Positions 17,467 through 61,287 of a DNA stretch of 64,000 nt are shown one piece after another; position 1 is the stretch's first letter; the number at the start of each line of letters is the position of its first letter. The translations under genes and the position numbers were made by a program. A model generated the notes under the pieces. The model was given only the letters and a program-made list of their open reading frames with translations, ran no database searches and was not told the DNA's origin. The stretch comes from Malacoraja senta (lineage: Eukaryota), in contig JAXLNO010000485.1 in the NCBI GenBank assembly GCA_038087875.1, positions 1-64,000 on the forward strand, given 5' to 3'.

Positions 17467-17512
17467 ATGATTCTGTTCATCTTGTTGAGTTTCTTCCGCG
17501 TACAAGGGGCAG
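17467..17512 (+). CDS. MHC class I heavy chain, exon 1 (signal peptide MILFILLSFFRVQGA + phase-1 G)
   Basis: ATG at 17467 (in-frame TGA upstream at 17449), hydrophobic 15-aa leader ending Q-G-A, strong donor G|GTAAGT at 17513. The leftover G joins GG of the alpha1 exon to give mature GPHTL. It lies in a non-repetitive, CpG-containing island downstream of an X/Y-box-like module. Confidence 0.8.
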
Positions 17513-17819
17513 GTAAGTTAATGATTCTCATTTTATTCGCTACTGGCTAAAAGCGTCTTGGCTTTATCTCAATCTTGACCGGAGGCGACTGAGTTTAAAA
17601 AAGCGCGCAATACACATTCAGTCTGGTTCATGGTTCATGCGGACGGACGTTAAAAGGGTTTAATCTCCACTGTTTCAGTACAATCCAGACTGGAATTTCT
17701 GCATTGATTTGCACAATGCCCCGTTTCCTTTGTGGAAGAAGGAACTACAGATATTGGTTTAAACTGATTTTAACTCGTGTAAAACAAACAGGAGCGAGGC
17801 ATTCACTAGGGTTTCCTCG

Positions 17820-18715
17820 CTGCTCCGCTCTTGCTCTCCCTTCCCCCCACATTCGTAACAAGGACAGAGTCCCCCTTGTCCTCACCTTCCACCCCATCAG
17901 CCGTCGCACAGCATATGATCCTCCATCATTTTTTGCCACCTCCAACAGGATCCCAATACTGGCCACATCTTCCCATCTCCACCTCTTTCTGCTTTCCGTG
18001 GAGACCATTCCCTCCGAAATTCCCTGGTCAACTCGTCCTTTTCCACCCAAACCACCCCCTCCCCAGGTACTTTCCCCTGCAACCGCAGGAGATGCAACAC
18101 GTGTCCCTTTCCCTCCCTTCTCGACTCCATCCAAGGACCCAAACAGTCTTTCCAGGTGAGGCAGAGGTTCACTTGCACCTCCTCCAACCTCATCTACTGT
18201 ATCCGCAGTTGCAGGTGTCAACTTCTCTACATCAGTGAGGCCAAGCACAGGCTCGGCAATCATTTCACTGAACTACTCCGCTCTGTCCATCTTAACCTAC
18301 CTGATCTCCTGGTTGCTCAGCACTTCAACTTCCCCTCCCATTCACAATCTGACCTTTCTGTCCTGGGCCTCCTCCATTGTCAGGGTGAGGCCCAGTGCAA
18401 ATTGGAGGAATAGCACCTCATATTTCACTTGGGTAGTTTACACCCCAGCGGTATGAACATTGACTTCTCTAACTTTAAATTGCCCTTGCTTTCCCTCTCT
18501 ATCCCCTCCCCCTTCCCAGTTCTTCCACTAGTCTTAGTGTCTTCAACTACATTCTATCTTTGTCCCATCAACTCCCCTGACATCAGTCTGAAGAAGGGTC
18601 TCGACCCGATAGGTCGCCCATTCCTTCTCTCCAGAGATGCTGCTGGCCTGCTGAGTTACTCCAGCATTTTGTGTCTACCTTCGAGTTAAACCAGCATCTG
18701 CAGTTCTATCCTACA
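17820..18715 (+). mobile_element. Penelope-like element 3' part (GIY-YIG) plus hammerhead-like terminal repeat
   Basis: RVPLVLTFHP...CNRRRCNTC...NLIYCIRSCRCQLLYISE...KLEE* followed by CAGTCTGAAGAAGGGTCTCGACCCGA; begins about 300 bp into MHC intron 1. Confidence 0.9.
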
Positions 18716-18904
18716 CAAAGTGCATTGTTTGACAGGTTCAAGTTTATGGCCAAATTCCTCGTATGTTGCAAAACATACTTGGCGAATAAAGTGTGATTCT
18801 GATTCTGATTGATCTGATTCTGAAATGTGGGAAGAGAGCGAGGCACTAGTACAATGCAAAATCATTAAAAGATTAGCACACACTGTGGATTTTGCTATTG
18901 ACTG

Positions 18905-19435
18905 AGTGACAACTCTTAGCTCCAAACGTGCGGTCGTCACGTTTATGTTGTTTAGTAGTGATGTGGCCAAGTTTGCAGATGATGCTAAAATAGGTGGAGG
19001 GGCAGGCAGTGTAGAGGATGCAAGGACTTTGCAGAAGGACTTGTTCGGGTTAGGAGAGTGGGCAGAGAAGTGGCAGATGAAATCCAGTATAGCAAAGTGT
19101 GGAGACATGCATTTTGGTAATAAGAATAAAGGCGTAGATTATTTTACAAATGGAGAGAGAATCTAGAAATCGGAGGCACACAGTGACATGGGAGTGTTGG
19201 TGCAGGACTCCTAAAAGGTTAATTTGCAAATTGAATCGGTAGTCAGGAAGGTGATTTATATCAAGAGGACTGGAATACAAAAACAGAAAATGCCGCCCGA
19301 TTTGTAAGAGTGTCAAAGGTCACAGGGAGATGACAGGAGAACGGCACTGAGAGGGAACGATAGGTCAGCCATGATTAAATTGTGGAGTAAACTCGATGGG
19401 CTGAACAACCAAATTCTGCACCTTTGACTTATGAA
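18905..19435 (+). mobile_element. CR1 RT fragment
   Basis: VAKFADDAKIGG...LQKDL..LGEWAEKWQM motif. Confidence 0.85.
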
Positions 19436-22400
19436 GTGAGTCAAAGTTCAGAACATGAGGGATGATCTTTTTATTTCTCCCCAGACTGGTGTGTCTGGAA
19501 CCAAAATTCACAGTTTAAAAATAAGGCTTCAGACATTCTTATGGCACCAAAACATGGTGACACTTGTGTATTGCCTAGGTTAGGTCTGCTATATGATTTT
19601 ACCGTTGTATGCGAAACAAAGTATTTCACTGTACCTAGGTGCATGTGACAATAAAATATCATTGAATCGTTGAATTCAGTGCAGTAATGAGATGAAATCT
19701 TTTCACCCAGAGGGTAATTAGTCTTTCAAATTCTCTGTCCAAGAAGGCTGTGGGCATTCAGTCAATCAGATGCTTGAGGCAGGGATAGGAAGATGCTTGG
19801 ATACAAAAGGAATTCTGGGTTAGTTCGGGAAAATGGTTGTCTGCTGGAGGATCGGTTATGATCTTATAGAATATCAGAGATTGGGAACAAAGGATGAATG
19901 GCAACATTTTGCTGATGTTAGGTTTGATCCCACTCCACAAGAGAATCCAGAAGGAAAGAGAGTATAGAGTGTTCAATTGTCATATGTGCTGACTACAAAA
20001 CAATGAAATTCTTGTAGCAGCTTAGCAGACCTGTAAGACAAAACAAATAGATAACATACTAAAAATCCAGTTAATTGATAATCCCAATACATGTGCAAAA
20101 ACACCTCGAATGCTTAGTTTAACCAAAGACAGTCCATAGGTCTACAGGGTCCGACTCGACACATTACCTATCCATGCTGCCTGATCTGCTGAGTTACTCC
20201 AACACTTTATTTTGTTCATTAATCATAGCTGAGTGTAGTGTAGTTCAGGGTTCAATATACGGGAAGATTTTAATGATCACATTCCAACATGCATCTCTAG
20301 AGCCAAACAAAACAATGACATTCTCCTTTGATGGTAATAATCTAATTTGGTGAAAGGGGAAACAGGCTTAGATATAAAGAATAACATTTATAGCAGTTCC
20401 AATGTAGGAAAATGCTTCAATGAGATTCGTAAGAATATTATTCTGTAACATTTTACTTCGAGCAGTATAATGGCATGACATGACAATTAGCAAAATAAAC
20501 ATTTAAGGTGCATCTTAAAGGAAGAATAAGAGGAAGGGATATTTAGAGAGCAATTCTATTACTTAGGCCTGCTCTTCAGATGAAATACTTAAATTTGTGA
20601 ATAATCAGGAAGTTATACTGCCCGGTTCATCGTGGGTTCTGACCTCACCACCATCGAAGGGATCCACACGAGACGCTGCCTCAAAAAGGAAGGCAACATC
20701 ATCCCCCTGGCCACGCTTTCATTACCTCCCACCATGGGGAAGAAAGTATAGGTGTCTGAAAACCATGACAACCAGGTTCAAGAATAGCTTCTTCCCAACA
20801 ACTATCACGCACTTGAACAATACACAACGCTAACCTCAACTGTGAAATTGTATGGACTGTATGCATGCCGAGGGAGGAGCTGCGTAGGAAGGAACTGCAG
20901 ATGCTGGTTTAAACCGAAGATAGACACAAAATGCTGGAGTAACTCAGCGGGTCCGACAGCGACTCTGGAGAAAAGGAATAGGTAGCGTTTCAGGTCGAGA
21001 CCATTCTTCAGACTGATAGTCAGGGGAAAGGGAAACGAGAGATACAGGCGGTGATATAGAGATATATAAGAACAAATGATTGAAAGATATGCTTTGAATG
21101 AAAGAGCTGTTGGTCTTAGATATTTAAATACAATGATCAGAGTTTAAAATCTGAATATTTTTCAATCAGAAAGATGATGGGTGAATGGGATGGAGCAAGT
21201 TAGCACAATGATGACAAAGTTTGAAGAAGGGCCTCAATCTGATACATCACCCATTCCTATTCTCCAGAGATGCTGCCTGACCCACTGAGTTATTCCAGCA
21301 TTTTGTGTCTATCGCTAAGTGCTGGAGTAACTCAGCTGGGCAGGCAGCATCTCCAGAGAACGTGGCTAGATGACGTTTAGGGTAAACACCCTTCCACAGA
21401 GTGAAGAAGGGGTCTTGACCCGAAACATCTATCCATCATCACATATCCATGATCTCCAGGGATGCTGCCGGACCCACTAAGGTGCTCCAGCACTTTGCGT
21501 CTCTTTGTGAACCAACATTTGTAGTTCCTTGTTTCTTCAATGTAAATTGACTGTCATTTGTAGGTAAGTGATAGAATCTGGAGAGAGATGATGGGAACTT
21601 GCAGAGAATAAGAATGAGTTGATCAAGAGCAAGAGTTTAATTGTCATCTGTACTGGCAATGGAACAATGAAATTCTTATACACATATTAAATATACAACA
21701 ATCAATGGTAAAATAAATTACTCTTAGTTATACTAGGTAACCAGACCATAACAGTGGAAAAACAAACGTCCTTACTGCAACCAAAATAAAGTCCATCACA
21801 GATCAGATTTGTTGAGGTAAGGTTGTGGTTCGTGTTGTGCAGTGTTTAAATGCCTGCTGCTCATGAGAAAAAAGCTGCTCTTAAACCTGGAGCTAACAGT
21901 TCTCAGGCTCTCTAACCTCAGAGACAGTTGATTGGTTCAACGGTATTTTATATGTGGCAAGTACCGAGGTACAGTGAAATTCATTATTGTATACAGTTTA
22001 GTACAAGTATCACTATATATAAGTCCTTAGATACATCTTAGATAAGCATCTCGGATACAGTATAAGTGTATAGCAGTAGTAAGCTGAGACAGTATACAGT
22101 GTCGCCAGTTTATGGTGCCATTTTCATGTCCCAGTTGTTGTAAGTGAGGGTTCTTGGCCTGACCATGAGGCCCATTGTCCTGGTGTTGTTGAGGGTTGAC
22201 CTGTCCAATCGAAGCTGTGGTGTCCTCTACTGCTGCAGGGCGCAACTGGTCCATGTGCCCGGCCTCTTGGATCAGCGCCTGGAACAGCCAAGTCCCAGGC
22301 TGCTGTAGGGCCTCCAGCACCCACTCCACTGTTGAGGCAGTCCATTCCCTCCCGCAGCCTGTCTGCCTATAAGCCATCCATCTGACTCCTTCCACTCTGG

Positions 22401-25400
22401 GCGGGAGAGCTGGGCCTTCCAGGTGGGTCCTCCATCCACGGTCCACAGCGAGCAAGAACTCAGTCCGTGATGGATGGGCCAGATCTTCCGGGCGAATTCC
22501 AGGTCCAGGGTGTCCGGCCCTGAGAGTATGGCCAGGGTGGTGTGGGTCTCTGATGATATTAGCTGTCTTTCTGAGGCAGCACCTCCTGTAGATCTATTCA
22601 ATGGTGGGATGGAATGGTATGGAATGAGTGCTTCATGGTCAGTGGACTGTTGGCTGAAGGTTCTGTTTGTGTGTCTCTGTGACTATATGTGTGGAGAAGG
22701 CTTCAAAAGAGTAGGTGAAGGGGCATTCTAAATGATGGGATGCACATATCATTGTAAACGGGGCCCTCAAAGTATTGATCTGTAAAATGCTAAATCTGCA
22801 TTTCATTGCAGTGGACTAGAGTTTAATGGTAGCCAATCCACATAAACACTTGTTCTTGTCTATGGCGAGTTTTGCAGACTGCTCCAATTACAATAAATTA
22901 ATATATAAAGAGAGTGGGATACTAGAAGGTACATTCCTTTTATCCATAGATGCTGCCTGTTCCACTGCATTACTCCAGTATTTTGTCTCTATCTTTGGTG
23001 TAAGCCAGCATGTGCAGTGCCTTCCTACACACACAAGAAGGATCCCAACAATGGGTTCTGTTTGTATGGAGTTGATACGTTCTCCCTGTGACCGCTCGGC
23101 TTTCCTCTTGGTGCTCAGAGGGCAGTGGAGGCCGGTTCTCTGGATACTTTCAAGAGAGAGCTAGATGGGCCTCTTAAAGATAGCGGGGTCAGGGGATATG
23201 GGGAGAAGGCAGGAACGGGGTACTGATTGGGGATGATCAGCCATGATCACATTGAATGGCGGTGCTGGCTCAAAGGGCCAAATGGCCTACTCTTGCACCT
23301 ATTGTCTATTGTCTATTGTTTCCTCCCACGTTCCAAAGACGTGTGTGTTTGTAGGTTTATTGGCCACTGTAAATTGCCCTGAGTGTGTAGGATGTGAAAC
23401 AGGGAAAACATAGAACTAGTGTATGGGTTGATGGTCAGTGCAGACTCAGTGGGCAGAAAGGCCTGTTTCCATGCTGCATCTGTTAAAAAAGATTGGTGAG
23501 CATGATACCCGAATTCAAACGTCACAGAGAAACCAACACATTTTAGTTTGTACAGACAAGAACACCCAAGAATGTTTGTATTCAAACAGACCAACAAAGT
23601 AATAAAGGTTTGCAGGTACAAAGTTCAACAGTGAGCATTGCTTAATCTAATCTTATACTTAGAACATTGTAGACGTAGGGCATTCAGCACAGGGAGGCTG
23701 TCCCATTGAGGGGGACGAGAACAAATGGGGAACTGTGGGGATGGGGGCGCCACTAAGAACAAAGGGGGAACTGGTGGGGATGGGGTCTGCTGCCATGTGT
23801 GGCAACAGGCAGTGGATAGGACTGTTCGGTACTTTGTAACTTTGTCTGCGCCAACACATGACGACATTTTTGTACAGCCTAGGTTCAGTTTAGTTTATTG
23901 TCACGTGTCGAGGTACAGTGAAAAGCTTTTTGTTGCTTACTAACCAGTCAGTAGAAAGACAATACATGATTACAATAATGTTTAATGCAAGGTGAAGCCA
24001 GCAAAGTCCGGTCAAGGATAGACCGAGGTTGCATGGAAAACAAAGCATTTCACTATACCCAGGTACCCTGGGTACATGTGACAATAGAGTATCATTCAAT
24101 CATTCTTTCATTCATCAGTCCTATTCCTCACAATTTATTTTCCATATAACACAGGCACCCATGGCCGCCAATGCTCCTTTGATTTTCTTTGCCATTTACG
24201 TGTGTTGATCTGGCTAATGGGTTTTGTGAAGTACAGCACAGTGGTGCAATGGTAGAGAGTTGCTGCCTCATAGCGCCAGAGACCCAGGTTCAATCCTGAC
24301 TTCAGGTCTGTCTATGTGGCGTTTGCACATTTTCACTGTGACCGAGTGGGTTTCCTCCAGGTGTTCCGGTTTCCTCCCACAACCCAAAGGCATGCAGCTT
24401 TGTAGGTTAATTGGCCTATGTAAATTGCCCCTAGTGTGTAAAGAGTGGACGAGAAAGTGGAATAACTAGAGTGAATGGGAGATCAATGGTCAGCATGGAC
24501 CCAGTGGGCCTGTTTCCGCTATAACCATATAATATAACCATATAACAATTACAGCACGGAAACAGGCCATCTCGACCCTTCTAGTCCGTGCCGAACACGT
24601 ATTCTTCCCTAGTCCCATATACCTGCGCTCAGACCATAACCCTCCATTCCTTTCCCGTCCATATAACTATCCTATTTATTTTTAAATGATAAAAACGAAC
24701 TTGCCTCCACCACCTTCACTGGAAGCTCATTCCACACAGCCACCACTCTCTGAGTAAAGAAGTTCCCCCTCATGTTACCCCTAAACTTCTGTCCCTTAAT
24801 TCTCAAGTCAACCCTTAACTCTAAACTAACCTTAAAAACCACTAAAATTACTGATTTATTGCAAGTAGCTAGATTCAAAACTATTTAAACTACTGAAGAC
24901 GGGTCCTGACTCAAAACATTACCTGTCCATTCCAACCACAGATGCTGCCTGACTCACTGAGTTCCTCCAGTATTTCATTGCTCAAGATTCCAACATGTCT
25001 CGATATTAACTACTTCTTTGAATAACACTGTTGTTTGGTATTTTTATGATATTTTTACGGTAGAATTGCATGCTGAAATGTTCATACCTTGAACATAGTT
25101 GAAAAGGATAGTAATTCATTAATGCATGCAGGAATAGTATTATTAAAATTGACTTTAGTAAAATACCGAATACACTGGCAATATGCAGTAGGTCAGGCCG
25201 CATCTGTGGGCAGGAAAGCAGAATGTTTTAGGCCAGAGACCCTTCAGGACTGGGAAGGAGGAGAAAGAAGAAAGGAGGAACTGAAGATGCTGGTTAACAA
25301 AATAAGACACAGTTTTGGAATAACTCAGTGGGACGGGCAGCATTACTGGAGAGCGTGGGATGCTAAGGTTTTGGGTCAGGACCATTCTTCAAACTGATTG

Positions 25401-25869
25401 TGGGGGTAAATAAAGCTGGAAGAGAGGAGGGGCAGAACAAAGTATGGCAGATGATAGGTGATAGATACCAAAATGAGAGAGCAGTCCTGAACTACTATCT
25501 GCCTCATTTGTGACCCTCGTACTTTCTTTGATCGGACTTTACTGGCTTTACCTTGCACTAAATGTTATTCCCTCATCATGTATCTCTACTCTGTAAATGG
25601 TTAGTTTGTAATCATGTATTGTCTTTACGCTGACTGGTTAGCAGGCAACAAAAGCTTTTCACTGTACCTCTGTACACGTAACAATAGACTAAACTAAAAT
25701 GTTGCAGAGAGGATTTTCCGACAACAAAGGCCAGAGATGAAAAGACAAAAGGAATTAAAGAATGGTGAATTGTGAAAATAGAGGAATGGATGAACGGGAC
25801 GGGGGAGGGCAGAAATAGATGCAAGTCCAGATGGGGCACAGGGGAGGGGAAGAAATGGGGGGGGTAGGT

Positions 25870-26310
25870 TACCTAAAATTCTCATCACTTCCCACACAAA
25901 CCATAGCATCCCAGGTAATCTCCCCTGCAACTGCGGATGTAACATCTGTTCCTGTACCTCCTCTGTGGTCTGCCTCGAGGGACCATAGCAGTCCTTCTAG
26001 GTGAGACAAGAGATTCATGTACACCTTCTCTAAACTGATCTATTGCATTCCCAATGTGGCCTCCTGTATATCGACGAGACCAAGCATTGACTCCACGACC
26101 ATTTCGCCGAAACTGGATCTGCCATGGACTTCTGCACTGGATCTCCTGGTTGCTAACCACTTGAACTTCCTTTCCCATTGCCATATTTACCTTTCTGTCT
26201 TGGGTCTCCTCCATTGCCAGAGTGAGGTCAATTGCAAACAGCCCCTAATATTCTTCTTGGGTAGCTTTCAACCTGATGGTGTGAACATTGAACTCGCCAA
26301 TTTTAGGAAA
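25870..26310 (+). mobile_element. Degenerate Penelope-like GIY-YIG fragment
   Basis: LIYCI...VANHLNF.SH...LSVLGLLHCQSE...LGSFQPDGVNIE. Confidence 0.75.
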
Positions 26311-27570
26311 CCTAAGCCCTACTCTCCTCCTCCTCCTCCTCCCCTTTCTCCCCCACACCCATATTTCTCCCCACCGTTGCCCCCCTCCCCTGTAGCCCAC
26401 CTGGACTTGCACCTATTTCCCTCCTCTCCCCCTTCCTTCTAAATTTGCCATTTGCAACCTTTCAATTATTTGGTTGCGCACCTTCTGTATTTTTATCTCT
26501 GGCCCTTGTCCATAATCTCCCTATCAACTCCCCCCATTACCGCCTCCTCACCTATGTTCACCTATTACCTGCCCCTCCTTTCATCCAGTTTCCTTCATCT
26601 CCCCCTTCCCCTCCCCCTCTACAATGCCCATACCACCCCCCCCAACCTCCCACAATGAGTCTGAAGAAGGATCAATTCCACAACACCACATATCCATGTT
26701 TTCCAATGATACTGCCTGACCTGTCGCGTTGTCCCAGCACTTTGTGTCTTTTTCTAGGAGGAAAAAAAGAAGCACGTTAAGCTGCAGGAAGTGTGGGGGA
26801 GGGAGAATGTCTTTCAATGATAGACACAGAAAGCTGGAGTAACTCAGCGGGACAGGCAGCATCTCTGGAGAGAAGGAATGGGTGACGTTTCGGGTCGAAA
26901 CCCCTTTTCAGACTTTCCAAGCCTTATCTGGTAGAATTTAATGAGATAGACATCTGTTTGTGGTCGAATGCATTATCTGAAAGCTGAATGTAAATTGTAC
27001 TGTTAAGGCTTTACAATACGTCATTGGTAAAAATGTGCATGGATTGAGCATATGGGCTTAATTGTCCTCCTGCTTTGAAGGAAAGCTCACAGCATGTCTC
27101 AATTGCATGTCAACCTAGTATCATAAAAACAACTGCTGTAGGAACTCAGGTGGTAGAGGAACATCTTTGTAAGAAGGAACTGCAGATGCTGGTTTACACC
27201 GAAGATAGACACAAAATGCTGGAGTAACTCAGTGGGTCATGCAGCATTATTGGCAAAAGGAAATAGGTAACATTTCAGGTTGAGACCCTTCCTCACATCT
27301 TCAAGAGTCAAGAGTATTTTATTGTCATATGTCCCAGATAGGACAATGACATTCTTACTTGCTGCACAACAGAAGGGAATGTAATTTGGAGGGAATTAAA
27401 TTTTTCACAATGATTTTTAACTGGTACAGTAAGTCACTTCTATTATTCATAAACCATTGTAGTAATATTTTCAAAACAATATTTGAAATGGCATAAGACC
27501 AAGACTGCATGCGAAGTCATCTTCTGATACAGTTTAGGATTTGGCAGGAAATGCTAAAAATATGGTTCAG

Positions 27571-27853
27571 CACGGTGGTGCAGCGGCAGAGCTGCAGCCT
27601 TACAGCGCAAGGGACCCGGGTTTGATCCTGACTACGGTTTCTCTCTGCATGGAGTTTGTACGTACTTCCCATGACAGGTGCAGGTTTCCTCCGGATTCCT
27701 CCCACATTCCAATGACATACCAATTGGCTTAGTAAAATTCTAAATTGTCCCAAGTGTGCATAGAATAGTGATAGTGTGCGGGGATCGCTGGTCGGCGTGG
27801 ATTCGGTGGGCTGAAGGACCGGTTTCTGCACTGTATCTCTAAATTGAACTAAA
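27571..27853 (+). mobile_element. V-SINE
   Basis: Full head, V-domain and tail. Confidence 0.9.
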
Positions 27854-28480
27854 TACCCAGAAAGCAAGGAAAAGTTCAAGCTTAAGGAGAGGAAATCTGA
27901 ATTCACATTCTAGACCTTCATCATTTAATTTGGCAACTAAAATGTTGCAACTCTATTTACTTCCACAGATGCTGTTGGATCATTTCCAACATGTTATATC
28001 TCTGTGTCAAGTTTATAGCACCATGTCATTATTTTACCTTATTTTCCACTGAAAATGGAAAGGTTGTTTGGTAGATTTGTAATGTAATCATACCCTAGAA
28101 CATGGGTCCTTTGCTGATTAATATTGAGAGTTGAGTCCAGCAATACATTCCTCAGGGCTCGAGCAATTGTGCTCTTGACCTGCTGTGAATTTATCAGAGA
28201 GAAGAATAAGGATGTGTAAAAGTGTAGTTATGCCGGCTGAAGTATGTACATTTTTGAGATGGTAGAGAAAATGGGAAGATGAATCACTTCTGTTCAGAAG
28301 ACATTTAACAAGGTTACACTTAAAGTGTTTATAAACATTTGTGAGGTAGGATCAGGTTATTTGACTGGAAGGTAATTTTCCCCAAGTGAATGTGGGTGGT
28401 GGGAAAATTGAGAGAGGAGATTAATTGGAATGTGAGATTTACATGGAAACATAGAAAATACTGTAGGTGCAGGAGTAGGC

Positions 28481-28930: not shown

Positions 28931-29243
28931 GATGTCAGAGGGTGAAGACTGCGCCAGCACGCATGCTGATCATCCAAAATCAGTACCCCGTTCCTGCTTT
29001 TTACCCATACCCTTGATTCCATTAGCCCTAAGAGCTAAATCTAACTCTATCTTGAAAACATCCAGTGAATTGGTCTCCACTGCCTTCTGTGGCAAAGAAT
29101 ACCACAGATATACAACTCTCTGGGTGAAAACGTTTTTCCTTATCTCATTCCTAAATGGCCTATCCCTTATTTTTAAACTATGACACAAATTTCTGTGTTC
29201 GATGACTTTATTCTCCTCAGTGATTTGGTGCACATGTTAATAG

Positions 29244-29550: not shown

Positions 29551-29574
29551 CATAATAGTGCTGCCCAAAAGTCA

Positions 29575-51600: not shown

Positions 51601-52593
51601 TTTTGTGGTTTATCTCCAAATTCAAAATGTAATTGTTTTGTACGTTGATATAGTTTTATTACTTGGTCTGAGTATAACTTATTTAACTTATATTTCAGTA
51701 CTGCAATTTTATTGTGTTTTACCATAGATGGTGCTATTGCATTTTCTATGTCTAATTGCTTTATTTCCATTTCCAAAGACTGTTGTTTGGCCCTATTCTC
51801 TTTATTAATAAATGATTGGGAGGATATTAATGCTCCTCGCACAAATACTTTAAATGTTTCCCAAAGAAGGGAGGCGGAGATTCCAGAGCTGTCATTAGCC
51901 TCGAAAAACATATTAATCTGTTTTACGAGGTATTCATTACATGACTTTTCTTCAAAATTTGGGGGTTAAGTCTCCATTGTGTCTTTGTCTCGGTCATTCC
52001 TTTTAGTTTAATCATAAATGTAAGTGGAGCATGGTCCGATATTATAATATTATGATATTGCGAATTATAGGTAAATGGGATAAGTTTAGAGTCTACTAAG
52101 AAATAGTCTATCCTTGAGTACGTTTGATGCACGGGTGAGTAAAATGAGTATTCTCGACCAGATGGGTTTTCAATTCTCCAAACATCCTTAATGTTTGTAG
52201 TATTAATATATGAATTTAGGAATTCACTTGACCGAGATTTAATTTTCTTTGACTTGATGATCTATCCAAGTAAGCATCCAGTGTACAATTTAAGTCTCCA
52301 CCGATAATTAAATTATGTTGTGTACATTCGGGATAATGTTAAGTATTCTCTTAAAGAACAGGGGGCTATCAAAATTTGGTCCATATACATTAAGGAGAGT
52401 CACTTTTTTTGAGTATAACTCCCCTACTAATACAATATATCTGCCTTCAATATCTTCTGTCGTTGATATATGTTTAAAGGGTATACCTTTACGAATTAAT
52501 ATTGCAACCCCTCTAGATTTATATGAAAATGAAGAATGATACGTTTTAGCAATCCATTTGGCTTTCAATCTATGTTGTGCTTCCTTTTTAAGA
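48624..52593 (-). mobile_element. L1-clade LINE copy 2, same junctions as copy 1, frameshifted near its 5' end
   Basis: ORF 48930-51911 is almost identical to copy 1; single-base deletions in short runs at about 51.95-52.33 kb break the frame. Confidence 0.95.
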
Positions 52594-53383
52594 TGGCTAT
52601 ATTTAAGAGGGAGTTAGATGTGGCACTTGTGGCTAAAGGGATCAGGGGGTATGGAGAGAAGGCAGGTACAGGATACTGAGTTGGATGATCAGCCATGATC
52701 ATATTGAATGGCAGTGCAGGCTCAAATGGCCGAATGGCCTACTCCTGTGCCTATTTTTCTATGTTTCTATAATTAGTATACAAATTAGCTATTTGTGGTG
52801 TTTCTTGAAAACACGAATACGAGAGAATGTACAGGATCTGCAGAACAACTAAAAGACTGCAGAAAGCAGCTTGAAAAGAAGGCTCTTCATCTATACAACA
52901 TAATTATGTTTTATTCAGCTATCATTGTTTGTAGAGTTTCTTATTGGAATGAAAACATCATCCAAGTTGTGACCCTTCCTTATTACGCCTGGTCCCAGGG
53001 GCATGGTTGGCATTAGCTCATTACCTTCATCCTAATAAAGGGTTGTTGTTCACAGTTGTTCCTAGGTTTTTATCAATTATAACCTTGATTTCAGAAACTG
53101 TTCTTTGTCTCTGGGCTAAAGTTCACAGACTCTCCTTTTCAAGGAGTGAGCAGTTTTAAGCAAACTGACCAGCAAATCCTTACAAATTCCATCAACCCCC
53201 CCCCCCTCCCCGACTTTGATTCATCAATCAATGCCAGAGGGAATGAATCATCTAAGTAAAGGGACCTGTCCCACTTACGTGTCCTTGGAACGCATATTAC
53301 GTGTTGAGCCACGATGGTCCGGCGAAGGTCGGGCGCGATTACATGCATACGTACAGCCGTCTGGAGCGCGTGACGTTATTTGA
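52594..53383 (+). repeat. Segment B copy 3 (continues into unique flank)
   Basis: Offset 4761 from copy 2; followed by AGATGGACAC instead of L1. Confidence 0.95.
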
Positions 53384-53940
53384 AGATGGACACAAAGCTG
53401 GAGTAAGTCAGCGGGACCGGCAGCATCTCTGGAGAGAAGGAATGGATGACGTTTCATGTCGAGACTCTTCTTCAGTCTGAAAAGAAGGGTATTGACCCGA
53501 AACATCACCCATTGCTTCTCTCCAGAGATGCTGCCGATCCCGCTGAGCTACTCCTGCATTTTGTGCCTATCTTCAATTTTCTTGGCCCCGCTCTGGGAGG
53601 AGAAGTGGGGGCGGATCCGGACCACAACGGCCGTGAGCCCCAGGCTGAGTTCGGCGATCGTTTGCCTGCTTCTGCTGCTGTTGGAGGTGAGACTTTGCGT
53701 CGCGCCAGGGTCTTGGCCTGTCCCACTTTGGCCGTCAGTTCCGCGACAGACCGTTGGCGTGCGAAAATCTCGTTCACTACAAAATTATCGGAGCCCCGCG
53801 CAATGTCGCGCACAACTACATACCCCTCCGCGCTTCCAAGTGGGACCGGCCCCGCGCGGCCATACGATGCCCGTGCGCCTCAACGCGACGACGAGTTCAC
53901 ATAATTTGTGTGCCAAGGACACGTAAGTGGGACAGGCCCT
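53260..53940. mobile_element. Harbinger-like MITE interrupted by a palindromic PLE-repeat dimer (about 53380-53575)
   Basis: TIRs AGGGACCTGTCCCACTTACGTGTCCTTGG / CCAAGGACACGTAAGTGGGACAGGCCCT with TAA on both sides (53257-53259 and 53941-53943). Confidence 0.8.
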
Positions 53941-54295
53941 TAAGAATACCAAGGAAAGGTAGCGCAGCTACACATCACTGGATATCTTTAACCTGTTCAA
54001 TGCCACCGCCGAGTACACTAGGGGTCATGGCCAATAGTGAAAAATAAACTTGGCAGTGAACAGCTTAATGGTCTCCATATTTTATAGAAAGCCTTCAATG
54101 TCCATGAGGGGTGAGCCTTATTATATCTATGTTTCTCTAAATATAGGAAGCACTTTTGTGGTAAAAGATGGGGCAGCTCGGGCCTTGAAAAGATCCAACC
54201 TTATGTGCAGCTTTACATTTGTTTATATGCAATAAGCAAAAAGAACACAATAGAAGATAAAACATGATAATAACTATAAGCAAAGCAAGAGATCG

Positions 54296-54495
54296 TGGCC
54301 TTACACGAGTTGCTGCCTTGCAGCACCAGAGACCCGGGTTTGAACCTGACTACGAGTGGTAACTGTATGGAGTTTGCATGTTCTTCCCATAACCTGTGTG
54401 GCTTTTCTCTGAGATGTAGGTAAATTGGCTTGGTATAATTGTAAATTGTCCCTAATATGGGCTGAAGGGCCTGTTTCAGCACTGTATCTCCAAAG
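54296..54495 (+). mobile_element. V-SINE whose tail is split by the hAT insertion
   Basis: Tail ...CTGTATCTCCAAAG resumes after 58607 as CTCTAAAGCTTAAAACTAAA. Confidence 0.8.
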
Positions 54496-54661
54496 CAGTG
54501 GTCTTAACCTGGGGTCGTGACCCCCATGGGGGTCGTTTGGGGGTTTCCGGGGGTCATGAAGGGGTTGTAAAGAACATCAATTTGTTGAGCCTATTTTTAG
54601 GAACCTAACAAAGGTACATACCACACACAGTATTTTGTTCACGTATGCGCATACGTATACA

Positions 54662-56691
54662 TAGGGCCTATGAGAGGGGGGTGCAGGGGGTACATCGTAC
54701 CCGGGCCCAGAGTCCAATAGGAGCCCGGGAGCTGAAGGAGGGGGGGCGGGAATTTCGTGAAATCTCAGAAAATGTTTGCATATATTTTGTGAAGACTAGC
54801 ATTCACATTTTGTGCCTTCAGAGTTTTATATATCGTAATTCGTAGAAATTGTGATCCATAATAAAGCAGGGAATTTTAACTGGCGGGTGTGTGGTCGGGG
54901 TAACCTGATTAAAAGAGGGGGAAGGGGATGGATCTTCCCTGTAGGAGGAGGGAGAGCACGAGGACCCAACAGAGTCATCACTACTGATGGGTCTTCCCTG
55001 CAGGAGGGGGGGGGGAGCACTAGGAGCCAGCAATCAGACCATGTGCTGTCTGCATGGTGGAGGTTGTGGGCCTGGTGCTGAGCCGGGAACTCTGGTGAGG
55101 TGACGGCTCTGGCCCGCTGGTGGCCGGTGGAGAGGCGAGGGTCGGCAGAGTCGCTGGTGGAGGCCCGTGGGGAGCTGGAGTAGAGATATGGGCAGCAGCA
55201 TCATTGGCTTTCTGAAGACAGTCAAGGTCGGCGACAGTGGCTGTGGTGGCCTCGCCCGGGGAGGTGGTGAGAGTCGGCAGCCGCGGCTGTTTCAGTGGTC
55301 CGGGCCTGGGTTTGGGTCAGTATGTGTGTGGATGGGTGGGTGTGAGTGAGTGGGTGAGGGTGTGTGTGTGTGTGTGTGGATGTGTGTGGGTGTATGTGAG
55401 TAGGTGAGTGAGTGTGTGTCTGAGTGTATGTGTGTGTTAGTGGGAGGGTGAACTTTATAAATGAAGTTAAAACCATTAGATCTGTTGAACTTTTGACTTG
55501 GTAACCTGTTTCCAAATGTTTGTGTTAGCTTCAGAATACTATTAACAATTCCAGCAACAGTAGCTTCTGCAGAGAGGTCATTTAGCAAACTCAAGCTGAT
55601 TAAGAATTATTTAAGGTCGACAATGTCTCATGAACGTCTTGTGGATTTGGCCAGGCTAAGTATTCAAAGTCAGATTTATTCATCACATACACCCGAAGGT
55701 GCAGTGAAGTGAATTTACCAGCAGTGATACACGTAAAAGAACACACAATACACAATAAAATTGAACACAACAGCATTCTTCACTGTGGTGGAAGGCAACA
55801 CGTTTCAGCCAGTCCTCCTCCTTTGTTCACCCGTGTTCGGGGCCATAACCCCTCCGTAGTCGCCGCTGGGGACGGCCCGATGTACAAGGCCCTCTCGTCG
55901 GGATGATCCAAACTCCGACGTTGGGACGGACAAACACACTCTGCGGCTTGGAGGTCCCGACTCGGCACTTTCCTACTGGAGACCGCAGCTTCAGGATGTG
56001 AGCCAGCGGTTCGAGCTCGTCTCTGGTGATCCCCGGCGAGGGATCCCAGGATCCGGATGGTAAGTCCACGCCACGCCCGCGGTTAGAAGCTCCGCAGACC
56101 ACAGCTCCACGGTGTCAACGTATTGAATCAATAGTATTGAATCATACATTGCCAGAACAATACATTTTTATGCTGTGATTTGACATTTTTCACAAAAAAG
56201 GCCAGGAAAGCTCTTTATATAAAGTAAATTTATATAATAAATCTTTTACTTTTTACTAATAATTATGTCTTTTGATGATATGAACTGCATTGAAACATAA
56301 AAGGATGTTTCAATGTGAATTCTTTCTCCTTATCTGTATTGTAGCATAAACAAAGATGTTCAAAACAAAGCTAGATAAAATGCTGGAGAAACTCAATGGG
56401 TGAGGAAGCATCTATAGAGTGAAGAAAACAAATGTGCTTTCTGATCCTTTTATTTAGATTTATTTATATTTATCATGGAGGGTGTATAGGGGCATAAGGC
56501 CTCAAATGCAGAAAATCAACAGAGCGCCCCATTCCACCCCTCTCTCATCTTCCATACCCCTTTTTGCCCTGCAGTCTCCAGCTCATGGCATAAAACTGTA
56601 GCATAGCGGATAAAAACAGGATGACTAATGGAGAAGGGAAGGGGCCCAAAAGAAACTTTGTACCCACTGATAAAATTCCTCTCAGGCCCTG
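54662..56691 (+). mobile_element. Nested non-autonomous hAT (Tip100/ZMYM1-like)
   Basis: TIRs TAGGGCCTATGAGAGG / rc CAGGGCCTGAGAGG; perfect 8-bp TSD CGTATACA (54654-54661, 56692-56699); internal relic FPNVCVSFRILLTIPATVASAERSFSKLKLIKNYLRSTMSHERL at about 55500-55660. Confidence 0.9.
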
Positions 56692-56725
56692 CGTATACAC
56701 GCACAAACAGTGTGTGTTGTGAACC

Positions 56726-58485
56726 ATGTCTTCCAAGACGCGCCACGTATAGTGAAGCATTTCTCAAGTTGGGCTTCACAAGCATTGTTCAAAATCCGTG
56801 GTCAAGCCGCGATGTGTTCTCTGTGCCAAGGTTTAGAGTCACGAGAGCATGAAGCCCAGCAAACTGAAGATCCATTTGGTGTCTTGTCACAGCAACCTGG
56901 CGGGGAAGGGCGGGGACTATTTCAAACGAAAAGAAGCCATAACTCAAGGGATCCCGCATCTATTCAACGGGTCACTGCGCTCATCAAAATGAAGCAGCGT
57001 TGGAGGCTTCATACCGGATTGCTTATCGAATCGCACAGACTAAGAAACCTCACACCATCGGTGAAGAGCTTATCAAGCCATGCCTTCTCGAAACAGCGAA
57101 GTTGGCGCTGGGGGAAGAGCAGTCAAACAAGTTCAGACAGACTTCCCTTTGAATGAAAAGTTGAATCTCGGATATGAGTAATGATATTCTGCTGCAAGTA
57201 GTGAGGGCTGTGACGAGCAGTCCAGTGTATTCACTGCAACTGGGCGAGTCAACAGATGTTGCCTCATGTTCCCAACTGCTAGTCTACGTTCGTTACCTCG
57301 ATGGAGAAGTACCTGTTCTCGAGCCATTGGCTACTACCACTCGGGGAGAAGATGTGTTCAGAATGCTGGAAGCCTTCCTCATCAAACATGAGCTTGGCTG
57401 GGAACGCCTTGTCGGGATGTGTACAGTTGGGGCACCTTCCATGGTCGGTTGCAGATACGGTTTCCAAGCCTTCGTGAATGATGTGGCTCCCCATGTCTCC
57501 TTCACCCACTGCATGATACATCGCCATGCTTTAGCGATGAAGACTCTCCCTCTTGCTCTTCTAGAAGTGCTTTCAGGTGTGGTGAAGATTGTGAACCACA
57601 TCCGACAGAGCGCAACAAACTCAAGAATCTTCAAAGCGATGTGTGAAGAAATGGGCGCCGATTTCACTGTTCTGTTATTCCACACAGAGGTGCGCTGGCT
57701 TTTGCGTGGTAAAGTTCTCAATCTTGTGATTCAACGTTGAGAGGAAATAGCGTTGTTCTTGGAGAGAAGGGGTACTGAGAAGGAGAATCAGCTTCATGAA
57801 AAGATGCAGGTTGAACTGTTCGTGATGAAGGTTGCTTACTTGGCTGACTTCTTCGCTGAGGTGAATTCTTTCAACCTGTCACTTCAAGGAAACATCCCAA
57901 TGCTACACACGGCTCGTGACAAAGTGGCAGCATTCAGGAGGAACCTTTACCAGAGAAGAGTCCAGGACGGTGACTCGACTATCTTCCTGAGATGACGACT
58001 CTCCTGGATGCTACGCCTGATGCTGAATGCCACTTCCACGAGGAGATCTCAACCCACCTCTGGCAATTAGTGAAGCCATCGAACGTTACTTCCCCGGACT
58101 GGACGACCGCTCTCGTGATCAGTGGATCATCCGACCCTTTACCGTTGAAGACGGTGGCATCAGTGATACTGACGTGACTGCGAAGGTTGAATTTTACCGA
58201 ATTCGTGAAGATGCGCAGCTCAAGAGTGACTTCATGGAACAAGGGCTTGCCACGTTTTGGCTGAAAGTGAAGGACTGTCCTGCTCTTTCAAAGAGGGCCT
58301 TGACCCTATTGGTCCAGTCCCCCTCCACCTCTCACTGTGAGGGTGGATTCTCAACTATGGTAACTCTGAAAACGAAGGTACGCAATAGGCTTGTGATCGA
58401 CACTGACATGAGATGCTGCATGTCGAGCATTCGTGCTCGTTTTGATTGCCTGATGACTGCGAAGCAATTTCAGCCATCCCATTGA
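56726..58485 (+). pseudogene. Buster-type hAT transposase pseudogene
   Basis: MSSK..YSEAFLKLGFT (BED-finger region), YSLQLGESTDVA, THCMIHRHALA, LLFHTEVRWL.RGKVL, CEGGFS, C-terminal QFQPSH*; multiple frameshifts and stops; first catalytic D appears as G (LQLGESTD). Confidence 0.9.
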
Positions 58486-58689
58486 CTGAGCAATGGCTGA
58501 CATGTTTTAATAAATCGGGCTGTTTTTTTTCAATTTTGTTTCAGAAGTCATGGTACTGATCAAGAATGCCCGATGGGGTCGGGGGCCAAAAAGATTAAGA
58601 ACCACTGCTCTAAAGCTTAAAACTAAAGAGGGCTAATAAAGGCCACAAAGTGGCTTTAGTGAGTCGGATTACAGAAAATCCACATCTTT

Positions 58690-59385
58690 TTCAAGGTTTC
58701 ATGGTTAGTTTATTGTCACATATACCAATTAAGGTACATTGAAATGCAGACTACCATACACCATACAAAAAAAAAGCAACAAGACACACAATAACGTAAA
58801 AGTTAACATAAACATCCACAACAGAGGAGCCCGCACGTTCCTCACTGTGATGGAAGGCAATAAAGTCTAATCTCCTTCCTCTTTATCTCCCGCGGTCGGG
58901 GCAGTCAAACAATCTGCAGTCGGCGGTCGAAACCCCCTGTTGGGGAATCGAAACTCCGGCGTCAGGGCGGTCGAAACTCCTGCGGCTTGGAGATCCGGAA
59001 TGTCGGTCTCGACCGAGGACCGCGGGCTCCGCGATGTTAAAGTCTTGCAGGCTCTCACAGTTGGAGCTCTAAAGTCGATCCCCGACAGGGATTGCGAGCT
59101 CCATGATGGTAAGTCCACAGGCTCCTGCGATGGATCTCCCGGTCGATCTCTAGCAAAGGCCGCCATTCCTCAATGTTAGGCCGCATTGTGGACGGAGATA
59201 CGATACAGAAAATATCGCATCAACGTCGAGGTAAGAGATTAGGAAAAGTTTCCACAACTCCCCCACCCCCCCCCCCCCAAAACCAGCTAAAGAACACTAA
59301 AGAATATACATTTAACACGTACAAAACGGACACAAAGAAGGAAGGGACAGACATACTGTTGGCGAGGCAACCATTGCAGCAAAAG
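58690..59385 (-). mobile_element. GC-rich unclassified retroposon (same family as 34945-35835)
   Basis: Shared 22-nt motif and similar T-rich/G-run/GC-rich layout; GTGACAATAAA-type tail. Confidence 0.6.
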
Positions 59386-59504
59386 GTGGATTGCTTAAGG
59401 ATATAGAAGGGAATATGTGCTTGGCGTTTGTGGATATAGGCGAGGTTTGGTTTCACCAAGGAAGACATGTAGAATAGTAAGGACCATTAATAGTAAGTAC
59501 ATCA

Positions 59505-60290
59505 TAAAATCCTCCAACATTTCTGCCACCTCCAACGGGATCCCACTACTGGTCACATCTTCCCATCTCCACCCCTTTCTGCTTTCCGCAGAGACCGTTC
59601 CCTCCGGAACTCCCTGGTCAACTCGTCCCTTCACACCCAAACCACCCGCTCCCCGGATACTTTCCCCTGCAACCGCAGAGATGCAACACCTGCCCCTTTA
59701 CATCCCCCCTCGACTCCGTCCAAGGACCTAAAGTCATTCCAGGTGAGGCAGAAGTTCACTTGCACCTCTTCCAACCTCATCTACTGTATCCGCTGTTTCA
59801 GTTCTCTACATCAGTGAGACCAAGCGCAGTCTCGGCGATCGTTTTGCTGAACACTTCCCTCAGTCCGTCTTACCCTACCCGATCTCCCGGTGGCTCAGCA
59901 CTTCAACTCCCCCTCCCATTCCCAATCTGACCTTTCTGTCCTGGGCCTCCTCCATTGTCAGAGTGAGGCCCAGCCCAAATTGGAGGAACAGCACCCCATA
60001 TTTCGCTTGGGTAGTCTATACTCCAGCGGTATGAACATTGACTTCTATACTTTCGATAGCCCTTGATTTCTCTCTCCATCCCCTCCCCCTTCCCAATTCT
60101 GCCACCAGTCTTACTGTCTCCGCCGACATTCTATCTTTGTCCCTCCCCTGACATCAGTCTGAAGAAGGGTCTCGACCCAAAACGATGCCCATTCCTTCTC
60201 TCCAGGGAAGCTGCCTGACCCGCTGAGTTACGCCAGCATTTTGTGTGTTTACGATTTTAACATCTGCAGCATCTGCAGTTCTTTCTTACA
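59505..60290 (+). mobile_element. Penelope-like GIY-YIG 3' fragment plus terminal repeat
   Basis: Close paralog of 17930-18715. Confidence 0.9.
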
Positions 60291-60399
60291 TGTGGAGAAT
60301 GCTAACATGCAGGGACACTGAAGTTAAGCAAGAAGAAGATGTTGGATCACTTGAAGAGAAATGTGGATAAATCCCCAGGACAGAGGGGTGTAGTGGATG

Positions 60400-60850
60400 A
60401 TAATAATAATCGTTGAAAACATTAGTGCCGTGCTGGTTTCCGATGGGCACGGTGACGGACGCACCACACATCTCTGTCCTCCATGCAGCTGGCAAGCTCC
60501 TCTTTTATCTCTACACATGCGTCTTCCATCAACGTCTTCACCATCATCTTGATTGGCCGTCCTGGGTCAAGTCTTCCATGGGTGGGTTCCACAGCACAAC
60601 CTTGTTTGCTGGCATTTCTGGGTGGCGGAGCCAGTGACCTGCGAGCCTCATCCTTCTCAACGTGATCTTCTCGGTCAGAGGTGGATTCTCCCCATAGAGC
60701 TGGGCGTTGGTGATGTGGTCCCTCCATCTGACATTTTGAACTTTTCCGAGCATTCGGGTGTAGGTACCATCGAGAGACTAGGACAGTGCTGGAGTGAGAG
60801 TCCATGCCTCACACCCGTACAATAATATGGTCTCTACAGTTGCAACGAAG
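60400..60850 (-). mobile_element. RTE-type LINE 3' fragment
   Basis: NVRWRDHITNAQLYGE...RRMRLAGH..RHPE...VVLW.PTHGR.DPGRP motif; (ATT/ATC)n tail at about 60400. Confidence 0.8.
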
Positions 60851-61011
60851 GCCAAATATTCAGGCTGTAGTTCAGTGACAAGTATAGTTCTGCAGGGATC
60901 TGTGCTGTGACCCTTGCTACTTGTGACATATATAAATGACTTGGACCCTGGTGTTCAGAAATTACCCAGTCATAACAATTAATCAAATAATGATTTTTAT
61001 TTTTATTTCAG

Positions 61012-61287
61012 ATTATCACTACGTTCAAGGACAGTTTGGTTGTGAGGTGGACGATCACAGTCCCACTGTAGGGATATTGAAGTTGGCCTTTGATGGAAGA
61101 TATGCATTTAGTTTTGATAAGGACAAACTAAAGTGGACGGTGCATGATCCAATAGCTGAGCCCTTCAAAGAGAAATGGGACAAGAATGAAAAAATGAACC
61201 GTTATTTCAAGAGCTTGTTAGAACATGACTGTGTGGATCTATGGCTTACATACTATGCAATTGGAAAGACATACCTGACCAGAAAAG
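61012..61287 (+). CDS. MHC class I heavy chain, exon 3 (alpha2 domain, 92 aa)
   Basis: Acceptor ttttatttttatttcAG, donor G|GTGAGT, 276 nt, phase 1-1. YHYVQGQFGCEV...AFDG...FSFDKD..KW...KEKWD...LEHDC...Y..G has H93, Q96, G100, C101, D119, G120, W133, K146, W147, C164, Y171. Confidence 0.95.

What the first reader, a model, noticed from the sequence alone, without database searches (positions are those of the whole stretch)
17467..61287. Hidden MHC class I gene stretched over more than 44 kb by giant TE-filled introns
Three exons (46, 261 and 276 nt) with canonical splice sites splice in phase 1 into an uninterrupted 194-aa leader-alpha1-alpha2 protein: MILFILLSFFRVQGA/GPHTLIYYYT...NETA/NYHYVQGQFGC...YLTRK. 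Intron 1 is 19,614 bp and intron 2 is 23,624 bp. In mammalian class I genes these introns are only a few hundred bp and the whole gene is a few kb. The 46-nt leader is invisible to the ORF track, so automated annotation could truncate or split the gene. About 9.5 kb of intron 2 is the recent L1 tandem array.
Basis: partly seen in the sequence, partly recalled or inferred. Interest (0 to 1): 0.72.

Follow-up and report, generated by a model that had tools for sequence, protein, structure and literature searches.

The report
Skate UGA class I gene, front half
The three exons are real and form the front half of a skate copy of UGA, an already named and crystallised shark-and-ray MHC class I-like gene. 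Its very long, transposon-rich introns are normal for this gene in sharks and rays, and gene predictors already find it in related species.

Summary
Exons 17467-17512, 37127-37387 and 61012-61287 (+ strand) have GT/AG splice sites, join in phase 1 and give an open 194-aa leader-alpha1-alpha2 reading frame. No other class I exon lies in the window.

A 3.5-kb transcript contig from a related skate aligns to the window in three blocks that break at these junctions. The window is colinear, introns included, with the annotated Amblyraja radiata orthologue (XP_032898133, gene span 77.7 kb).

The gene is not a classical class I gene. It belongs to the nonclassical UGA lineage:
- the best solved structure is 9CH4, "shark nonclassical MHC class I, UGA";
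- a tree puts it in the skate clade inside the UGA clade;
- it carries the lineage's F143/L159 groove substitutions.

Orthologues span 31-78 kb in six sharks and rays, all annotated by NCBI. So the gene is neither hidden nor unusual. Intron 2 (23.6 kb) is the longest measured, inflated by a 9.8-kb antisense L1 array and a hAT remnant.

The alpha3, TM and tail exons lie beyond the window, so intactness cannot be judged. This scan already found UGA copies on other pieces of this genome. It is an ordinary new copy of a known gene.

The parts
17369..17466 (+). 5' untranslated part of exon 1 (minimum extent)
   Evidence: Skate transcript contig L002 bases 1-145 align to window 17369-17510 at 92%. 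It contains a one-codon uORF, ATG TGA, at 17446-17451, where A. radiata reads ATG CGA in frame.
17467..17512 (+). Exon 1 coding part: signal peptide, 15 codons plus 1 base
   Evidence: It matches the leader of the A. radiata, L. erinacea and R. longicauda orthologues. The donor GTAAGTTAATG is identical in A. radiata. A 6-bp in-frame deletion removes 'LA'.
17513..37126 (+). Intron 1, 19,614 bp
   Evidence: Colinear with A. radiata intron 1 at 80-93% identity and with R. longicauda. Eleven unique colinear blocks are shared with sawfish intron 1; 0 of 2000 shuffles reached that colinearity. At least 43% is repeated sequence.
37127..37387 (+). Exon 2: alpha1 domain
   Evidence: phmmer gives 3.6e-36 to 9ch4_A (UGA) and 1e-9 to nurse shark UAA 6lup. 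It is 94% nucleotide-identical to the A. radiata exon with identical acceptor and donor. cDNA block 152-414 ends exactly at 37387.
37388..61011 (+). Intron 2, 23,624 bp
   Evidence: Only the first ~2 kb and last ~1.5 kb align to A. radiata and R. longicauda; the middle is lineage-specific insertion. At least 65% is repeated sequence.
41689..42630 (+). Reverse-transcriptase ORF of another non-LTR element, sense strand
   Evidence: Pfam RVT_1 at 4.7e-32. Copies at 90-98% identity occur in A. radiata introns.
43068..52893 (-). Tandem array of 5'-truncated L1 plus flank, two full units and part of a third
   Evidence: Period 4761-4765 bp at 99-100% identity. ORFs 44166-47807 and 48930-51911 carry EN and RT domains. 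The match to human LINE-1 ORF2p is 2.4e-171, aligned from its residue 55. There is no orthologous element at this place in A. radiata or R. longicauda.
56710..58485 (+). Decayed hAT-type DNA transposon remnant (lead only)
   Evidence: ORF 57174-57740 resembles ZMYM1/FAM200/ZBED5 RNase-like (DUF4371) hAT transposase clusters, score 0.95 with 200 shared features. Pfam finds no hit for that ORF or for the two neighbouring ORFs. The stretch is unique within the window and absent from A. radiata.
61012..61287 (+). Exon 3: alpha2 domain
   Evidence: Pfam MHC_I at 2.9e-13, 50.2 bits against a cutoff of 28.3. phmmer gives 6.8e-35 to 9ch4_A. It is 96.7% nucleotide-identical to the A. radiata exon. The cDNA block ends exactly at 61287.
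61288..64000 (+). First 2.7 kb of intron 3; the alpha3 exon is not reached
   Evidence: No alpha3, TM or tail match in the window. Window 63404-63996 aligns to A. radiata L001 59955-60546, 8.6 kb short of its exon 4. It also aligns to R. longicauda L003 23839-24250, 1.5 kb short of its exon 4. An 85%-identical L1 fragment lies at 62275-63313.

Best explanation
The window holds the promoter-proximal half (5'UTR and leader, alpha1, alpha2 exons) of a skate orthologue or copy of UGA. UGA is a nonclassical, low-copy MHC class I lineage shared by sharks and rays. The three exons are spliced across 19.6-kb and 23.6-kb introns. The alpha3 (Ig C1), transmembrane and cytoplasmic exons lie past the window end. 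The long first intron is inherited: its backbone is shared with other skates and with a sawfish. Intron 2 was inflated in this lineage by transposon insertions, chiefly an antisense L1 array and a hAT remnant. By inference from orthologues and from what is reported for shark UGA, the product is a beta2-microglobulin-associated type I membrane protein. Its groove keeps six of the eight classical peptide-terminus anchors but has hydrophobic residues at positions 143 and 159, and it is reported to hold lipid-like ligands, CD1-fashion. What is shown here is exon structure, orthology, lineage membership and purifying selection on alpha1-alpha2. Expression in this species, completeness of this copy, beta2m pairing and the ligand are inferred.
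For: Splice sites and frame. Transcript contig L002 (Logan SRR11241640, 3,455 nt, uninterrupted 334-aa CDS) aligns to the window in three blocks: 17369-17510, 37125-37387 and 61014-61287. It continues into exons 4-6 of A. radiata and R. longicauda. Window and A. radiata locus L001 (gene span 77,748 bp for the 341-aa XP_032898133) are colinear over 19.3 kb at a mean 87% identity, including both introns. Donor and acceptor sequences are identical. Lineage: alpha1 and alpha2 each hit 9ch4_A at about 1e-35, against 1e-9 to 1e-12 for any other solved class I. 9CH4 is titled 'Crystal structure of shark nonclassical MHC CLASS I, UGA'. The AF2 model of the A. radiata orthologue (pLDDT 89.3) superposes on it at TM 0.94, Z 29.4 and 1.8 A. 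In the ML tree the window sits in the skate clade (100/100), within batoids (100/99), within a clade holding the 9ch4-like zebra shark protein (100/99). Anchor columns read Y Y R F K W L Y, as in all UGA rows, against Y Y R T K W Y Y in ordinary class I. dN/dS for alpha1+alpha2 is 0.43, 0.23, 0.32 and 0.18 against A. radiata, R. longicauda, Pristis and Stegostoma, with no stops. The lipid-binding report for UGA and UFA is in review PMC12562908.
Against: Only three of six exons are visible, so the copy could be broken downstream. This copy differs from every orthologue by a 6-bp deletion in the signal peptide. It also has a stop directly after the upstream ATG that A. radiata and L. erinacea models use, although R. 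longicauda lacks that ATG altogether. Against A. radiata alone the alpha1 dN/dS is 0.59, based on few substitutions. The transcript evidence is from a related skate, not this genome. The lipid-ligand statement is a personal communication in a review, and six of eight peptide anchors are retained.
Confidence: 0.9

Rival explanations
1. It is a dead or null UGA copy: the visible 5' half is intact, but the gene is disabled downstream or not expressed, one of several duplicates undergoing birth-and-death turnover.
For: Earlier follow-ups in this scan report several UGA copies on other pieces of this genome, some with a lost splice site or a frameshift (AI notes, not checked here). This copy has a unique 6-bp signal-peptide deletion and a TGA after the upstream ATG. 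L. erinacea also has two copies.
Against: There is no stop or frameshift in 194 codons and all five visible splice signals are conserved. dN/dS is 0.18-0.43. Exons are 94-97% identical to A. radiata against about 87% for introns. The main ATG is the start used by R. longicauda and by the transcript-derived proteins.
Confidence: 0.2
2. The alpha1 and alpha2 exons belong to two different partial genes or gene fragments that merely lie on the same strand 23.6 kb apart.
For: The distance is large, and more than half of the interval is lineage-specific insertion.
Against: The same order and orientation are seen in A. radiata, R. longicauda, Pristis and Stegostoma, with the exon flanks colinear. One cDNA joins the orthologous exons. 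There are no other class I exons in the window. Both exons place with the same closest relative.
Confidence: 0.02
3. It is a classical, peptide-presenting class I gene (UAA-type).
For: Six of the eight peptide-terminus anchors, the C101-C164 pair and the N86 glycosylation site are present.
Against: Nurse shark UAA (6lup) scores only 1e-9 on alpha1 against 3.6e-36 for UGA. T143 is F and Y159 is L throughout the lineage. The tree separates the clade from other class I at 100/99.
Confidence: 0.02

Closest known systems
Shark nonclassical MHC class I UGA (PDB 9CH4, released 2026-03-18); orthologues annotated by NCBI as 'class I histocompatibility antigen, F10 alpha chain-like', e.g. Amblyraja radiata XP_032898133.1
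   Same: The exon plan, splice sites and leader are the same. Alpha1-alpha2 is 93% identical to A. radiata. Each domain scores about 1e-35 against 9CH4, and the A. radiata orthologue is 58% identical to 9CH4 over 267 aligned residues. The F143/L159 signature, the long first intron and the synteny of intron sequence are shared.
   Different: The signal peptide is two residues shorter and the upstream ATG is closed by TGA. Intron 2 is two to five times longer than in the other species measured, because of an L1 array. Only the first three exons can be seen.
UGA-sister lineage of skates (e.g. Leucoraja erinacea XP_055486430.1, on the same contig as a UGA copy)
   Same: It is an MHC class I-like gene, the nearest outgroup in the tree, with L159 and a hydrophobic residue at 143.
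   Different: It is only about 38-45% identical, sits on a long branch (0.92) and has lost Y7 and Y59. The window gene is not of this lineage.
CD1 of tetrapods
   Same: UGA is reported in a review to be CD1-like in ligand (lipids). The orthologues end in a YQNI tyrosine motif, as endosome-sorting CD1 tails do (orthologue sequences).
   Different: There is no sequence affinity. No CD1 chain is among the 60 best solved-structure matches, whereas MR1, ZAG, HFE and classical class I are. Most classical anchors are retained. The resemblance, if any, is functional and not one of membership.
Chicken YF1*7.1 (lipid-presenting class I)
   Same: It is a class I molecule that keeps a classical-looking framework yet binds lipidic ligands. 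It is a structural match at Z about 25.
   Different: It is a different lineage, about 30% identical, encoded by a compact bird gene.

Membership tests
MHC class I heavy chain (Pfam PF00129 MHC_I) | Alpha1-alpha2 peptide-binding superdomain recognisable by profile | tested here: met
   The alpha2 exon hits PF00129 at 2.9e-13, 50.2 bits against a cutoff of 28.3. The alpha1 exon has no Pfam hit on its own but matches class I alpha1 of shark, fish and bird structures at 1e-9 to 1e-5.
MHC class I heavy chain (Pfam PF00129 MHC_I) | Alpha2 disulphide (C101-C164) and N-glycosylation site at the end of alpha1 | tested here: met
   GC...DC cysteines sit at the aligned positions and the N-E-T sequon ends alpha1.
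MHC class I heavy chain (Pfam PF00129 MHC_I) | Alpha3 C1-set Ig domain, transmembrane segment, beta2m association | not testable with these tools
   The exons lie outside the window. They are present in all orthologues (PF07654).
Elasmobranch nonclassical lineage UGA | Closer to the named UGA reference (9CH4) than to any other class I | tested here: met
   About 1e-35 per domain against at most 1e-9 for the next structure. Entry title.
Elasmobranch nonclassical lineage UGA | Monophyly with UGA orthologues of sharks and rays | tested here: met
   The tree gives 100/99 for the clade that includes the zebra shark protein, which is about 88% identical to 9CH4. Topology inside it follows taxonomy. 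Named UFA, UDA and UEA references were not available to include.
Elasmobranch nonclassical lineage UGA | Lineage groove signature (hydrophobic 143, Leu 159, other anchors largely kept) | tested here: met
   The window reads Y Y R F K W L Y, as do all skate rows. Sharks and rays have F/L/M at 143 and L at 159.
Elasmobranch nonclassical lineage UGA | Lipid ligand, MHC linkage, tyrosine-based tail | not testable with these tools
   The ligand is known only from review PMC12562908. No flanking genes are in the window. The tail exon is outside the window.
Classical class I (UAA) | All eight peptide-terminus anchors (Y7 Y59 Y/R84 T143 K146 W147 Y159 Y171) | tested here: not met
   Six of eight are present; T143 is F and Y159 is L.
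CD1 | Sequence or profile affinity to CD1 heavy chains | tested here: not met
   No CD1 chain is among the best 60 solved-structure matches of alpha2 or of the full orthologue.

The most novel reading that the evidence does not exclude
UGA is described as single- or low-copy in sharks and rays. It may have multiplied in this skate into a small birth-and-death family of 30-80 kb genes. This window's copy, with a shortened signal peptide, a closed upstream start and an L1-swollen intron 2, would be a diverging paralogue rather than the orthologue. My data do not exclude this, because the other copies reported by the scan were not compared with this one.
Probability: 0.2. Interest if true: 0.35.

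Novelty: new member of a known kind. Interest (0 to 1): 0.2.

Why it matters
It adds one more well-delimited skate copy of UGA, with exact exon junctions, for anyone cataloguing elasmobranch MHC-Ib genes. It also shows that the gene's long first intron predates the skate-sawfish split, while intron 2 grows by lineage-specific transposon insertion. It does not reveal a new gene kind, a new architecture or an annotation blind spot.

Tried and rejected
1. The first structure prediction used a 6-row alignment and gave pLDDT 60.9. It was discarded and repeated with 45 rows, giving pLDDT 89.3.
2. Full-text searches for the 9CH4 code and for a UGA/UFA primary paper found none in the library. The two Almeida et al. 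papers are not held. The lipid-binding claim therefore rests on a review's personal communication.
3. I looked for a nested or neighbouring host gene. A GPR139-like 7TM protein is fused to UGA in some L. erinacea models, but it has no match in the window or in the A. radiata locus. Pfam found nothing in 14 further ORFs and Rfam found nothing at gathering threshold.
4. I tested whether the colinear skate-sawfish intron-1 blocks are selected elements. Their 67-81% identity is about what synonymous divergence predicts (dS 0.44, roughly 67% identity). Neutral persistence is sufficient, so I do not call them regulatory elements.
5. The look-up of encoding contigs found no record for the two L. erinacea isoforms.
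Full report
OBSERVATION

- Exon 1 coding part is 17467-17512 (46 nt) and ends ...GGGGCAG|GTAAGT.
- Exon 2 is 37127-37387 (261 nt). It is preceded by a pyrimidine-rich tract and TCTAG| and followed by |GTTAGT.
- Exon 3 is 61012-61287 (276 nt). It is preceded by TTTTATTTCAG| and followed by |GTGAGT.

Joined, the exons give the quoted 194-aa open frame with phase 1 at each junction. Intron 1 is 19,614 bp and intron 2 is 23,624 bp. The window has no N runs. tblastn with either domain finds no second alpha1- or alpha2-like exon on either strand.

IS IT ONE GENE, AND ARE THESE THE JUNCTIONS?

A phmmer scan of 1.8 billion proteins with the alpha1 exon recovered full-length relatives. Their names and species come from the cluster look-up and from a follow-up search with the A. 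radiata protein:
- Leucoraja erinacea XP_055521884/85;
- Amblyraja radiata XP_032898133;
- Rhinoraja longicauda, found with the follow-up search.

Their leaders read MILFILLSFFHVQGALAG... or MVLFLLLSFFRVQEALAG..., matching the window's 15-residue leader. So the weakest element of the finding, the 46-nt exon, is real.

The A. radiata gene was fetched with its introns (L001). The 341-aa protein is annotated across 77,748 bp. Alignment of exon 1 and exon 2 with flanks shows identical donor and acceptor sequences in the two species. The window's exon 1 differs by one in-frame 6-bp deletion that removes 'LA'.

A Logan contig from run SRR11241640 (L002, 3,455 nt) carries an uninterrupted 334-aa CDS, so it must be a transcript. 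It aligns to the window in three blocks: 17369-17510, 37125-37387 and 61014-61287. It then continues into exons 4, 5 and 6 of A. radiata and R. longicauda. Spliced mRNA of a related skate therefore joins the orthologous exons at the predicted junctions. It also places the transcription start at or before 17369.

ORTHOLOGY AND THE INTRONS

A colinear chain of 39 blocks (19.3 kb, mean 87% identity) links window 14747-63996 to the A. radiata locus.
- Most of intron 1 is in the chain.
- Of intron 2, only the first ~2 kb and last ~1.5 kb are in the chain.
- The same pattern holds against R. longicauda.

Against the sawfish Pristis pectinata, 11 unique, non-repeated blocks inside intron 1 are colinear; 0 of 2000 shuffles reached this. 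Their identity (67-81%) is about what the synonymous divergence of the exons predicts (dS 0.44). They show common descent of a long intron rather than selection.

Intron sizes read from protein and cDNA mapping:

| Species | Intron 1 | Intron 2 | Intron 3 |
|---|---|---|---|
| This window | 19.6 kb | 23.6 kb | >2.7 kb |
| A. radiata | 31.8 kb | 11.3 kb | 20.4 kb |
| R. longicauda | 15.0 kb | 4.3 kb | 2.8 kb |
| Pristis | ~16 kb | 4.7 kb | 2.5 kb |
| Stegostoma | 8.8 kb | 5.1 kb | 0.2 kb |

Annotated gene spans are 31.1 kb (Rhinoraja), 36.5 kb (Pristis), 41.1 kb (Stegostoma), 45.9 kb (Heterodontus), 69.4 kb (Hemitrygon) and 77.7 kb (Amblyraja). A long gene with a long first intron is thus the normal state of this gene in sharks and rays, and NCBI's pipeline models it. 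The window's intron 2 is the longest measured.

WHAT FILLS THE INTRONS

Judged only by matches elsewhere in the window or at non-syntenic places in the A. radiata locus, at least 43% of intron 1 and 65% of intron 2 is repeated sequence. The three exons score 0%.

Region 43068-52893 is a tandem array with period 4761-4765 bp and 99-100% identity. Its ORFs lie on the minus strand, antisense to the gene. They carry endonuclease and RT domains and match human LINE-1 ORF2p at 2.4e-171 from residue 55 onward, so the L1 is 5'-truncated. The array has no counterpart at this position in the other skates, so it is a lineage-specific insertion that accounts for about 9.8 kb of intron 2.

Other elements:
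- A sense-strand RT ORF lies at 41689-42630.
- The otherwise unique stretch around 56.7-58.5 kb looks like a decayed hAT transposase (a lead only; Pfam found nothing there).
- A further L1 fragment sits in intron 3 at 62275-63313.

WHICH CLASS I GENE

The alpha2 exon passes Pfam MHC_I. Each domain hits one solved chain far above all others: 9ch4_A at 3.6e-36 and 6.8e-35, against 1e-9 or weaker for the rest.

I modelled the A. radiata orthologue with a 45-row alignment (pLDDT 89.3) and searched the PDB. 9CH4 is 'Crystal structure of shark nonclassical MHC CLASS I, UGA', released 2026-03-18. It matched at TM 0.94, Z 29.4 and 1.8 A over 268 residues. The zebra shark homologue is about 88% identical to 9CH4.

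In a maximum-likelihood tree the window's protein sits in a skate clade (100/100), inside a batoid clade (100/99). That clade sits inside a group containing the shark sequences, including the 9CH4-like one (100/99). The L. erinacea 'UGA-sister' protein and ordinary class I sequences fall outside.

At the eight peptide-terminus anchor columns the window reads Y Y R F K W L Y, as do the other UGA rows. The column mapping is validated by Y Y R T K W Y Y in many other class I rows. So the gene is UGA, not a classical class I gene, and not a CD1 member by sequence (no CD1 among the top matches).

A 2025 review states that UFA and UGA are single- or low-copy, MHC-linked genes of sharks and rays. It adds that crystal and mass-spectrometry data suggest they bind lipids like CD1d, citing a personal communication (PMC12562908). 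Verissimo et al. 2023 place all elasmobranch Ib genes in the MHC (PMC10751288). I found no primary UGA paper in the library.

IS THIS COPY ALIVE?

The visible part is intact, and dN/dS for alpha1+alpha2 is 0.43, 0.23, 0.32 and 0.18 against four species. Exons are 94-97% identical to A. radiata against about 87% for introns.

Two copy-specific changes are worth noting:
- the 6-bp deletion in the leader, where every orthologue keeps A-L-A/S before the mature end;
- CGA to TGA right after an upstream ATG that the A. radiata and L. erinacea models use as start.

R. longicauda has no such ATG and the transcript-derived proteins start at the main ATG. The second change is therefore probably harmless and leaves a one-codon uORF.

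The alpha3, TM and tail exons are not in the window. By synteny the alpha3 exon should lie roughly 1.5-9 kb beyond base 64000. Completeness cannot be judged here.

EARLIER NOTES OF THIS SCAN

Other follow-ups report UGA copies on other pieces of this genome, spread over 21-51 kb, some intact and some broken. They also report a 'UGA-sister' gene. I reached the UGA assignment independently from 9CH4 before reading them. They agree with it, and they raise the possibility that this is one of several copies or haplotigs. The L1 array was noted separately, and I confirmed its structure.

VERDICT

The biology is ordinary: a further copy or orthologue of a named, crystallised lineage, with an intron architecture shared by all its relatives and already captured by annotation in six species.

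Noticed in passing
window 17446-17451 and 17500-17512: In this copy the upstream in-frame ATG used in A. radiata and L. erinacea models is followed directly by TGA (CGA in A. radiata), leaving a one-codon uORF. The leader also lacks 6 bp ('LA') that all 16 orthologues examined keep.
   Followed up: partly
window 19674-33808 versus L004 (Pristis pectinata) 3593-11293: Eleven unique, colinear non-coding blocks of 67-81% identity in intron 1 are shared between skate and sawfish (0 of 2000 shuffles). The identity is near the neutral expectation from dS 0.44, so this is probably slow neutral decay rather than enhancers.
   Followed up: yes
window 10838-11683 (-), with related copies near 17.8-18.7 kb, 39.5-40.0 kb and 59.5-60.3 kb: An ORF has a weak GIY-YIG nuclease hit (2.9e-4), suggestive of a Penelope-like retroelement family that is also repeated in the A. 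radiata locus. Rfam finds no hammerhead there at gathering threshold or at E<=1.
   Followed up: partly
L001 (A. radiata) 75478-75753: Directly upstream of the TM exon (75754-75862), tblastn finds a 44%-identical alpha3-like stretch. It may be a decayed duplicate alpha3 pseudo-exon in intron 4.
   Followed up: no
L. erinacea protein models P0152, P0169 (LOC129716032 isoforms): Some NCBI isoforms fuse a GPR139-like 7TM receptor (PF00001) to the UGA alpha1-alpha2 region. This is probably read-through or a mis-join of neighbouring genes. No GPR139-like sequence is in this window or in the A. radiata locus.
   Followed up: partly
window 56710-58485 (+): Three consecutive ORFs lie in a stretch with no other copy in the window or in the A. 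radiata locus. The middle one looks like a hAT (ZMYM1/FAM200/ZBED5-type) transposase by language-model features only. Pfam has no hit for any of the three.
   Followed up: partly
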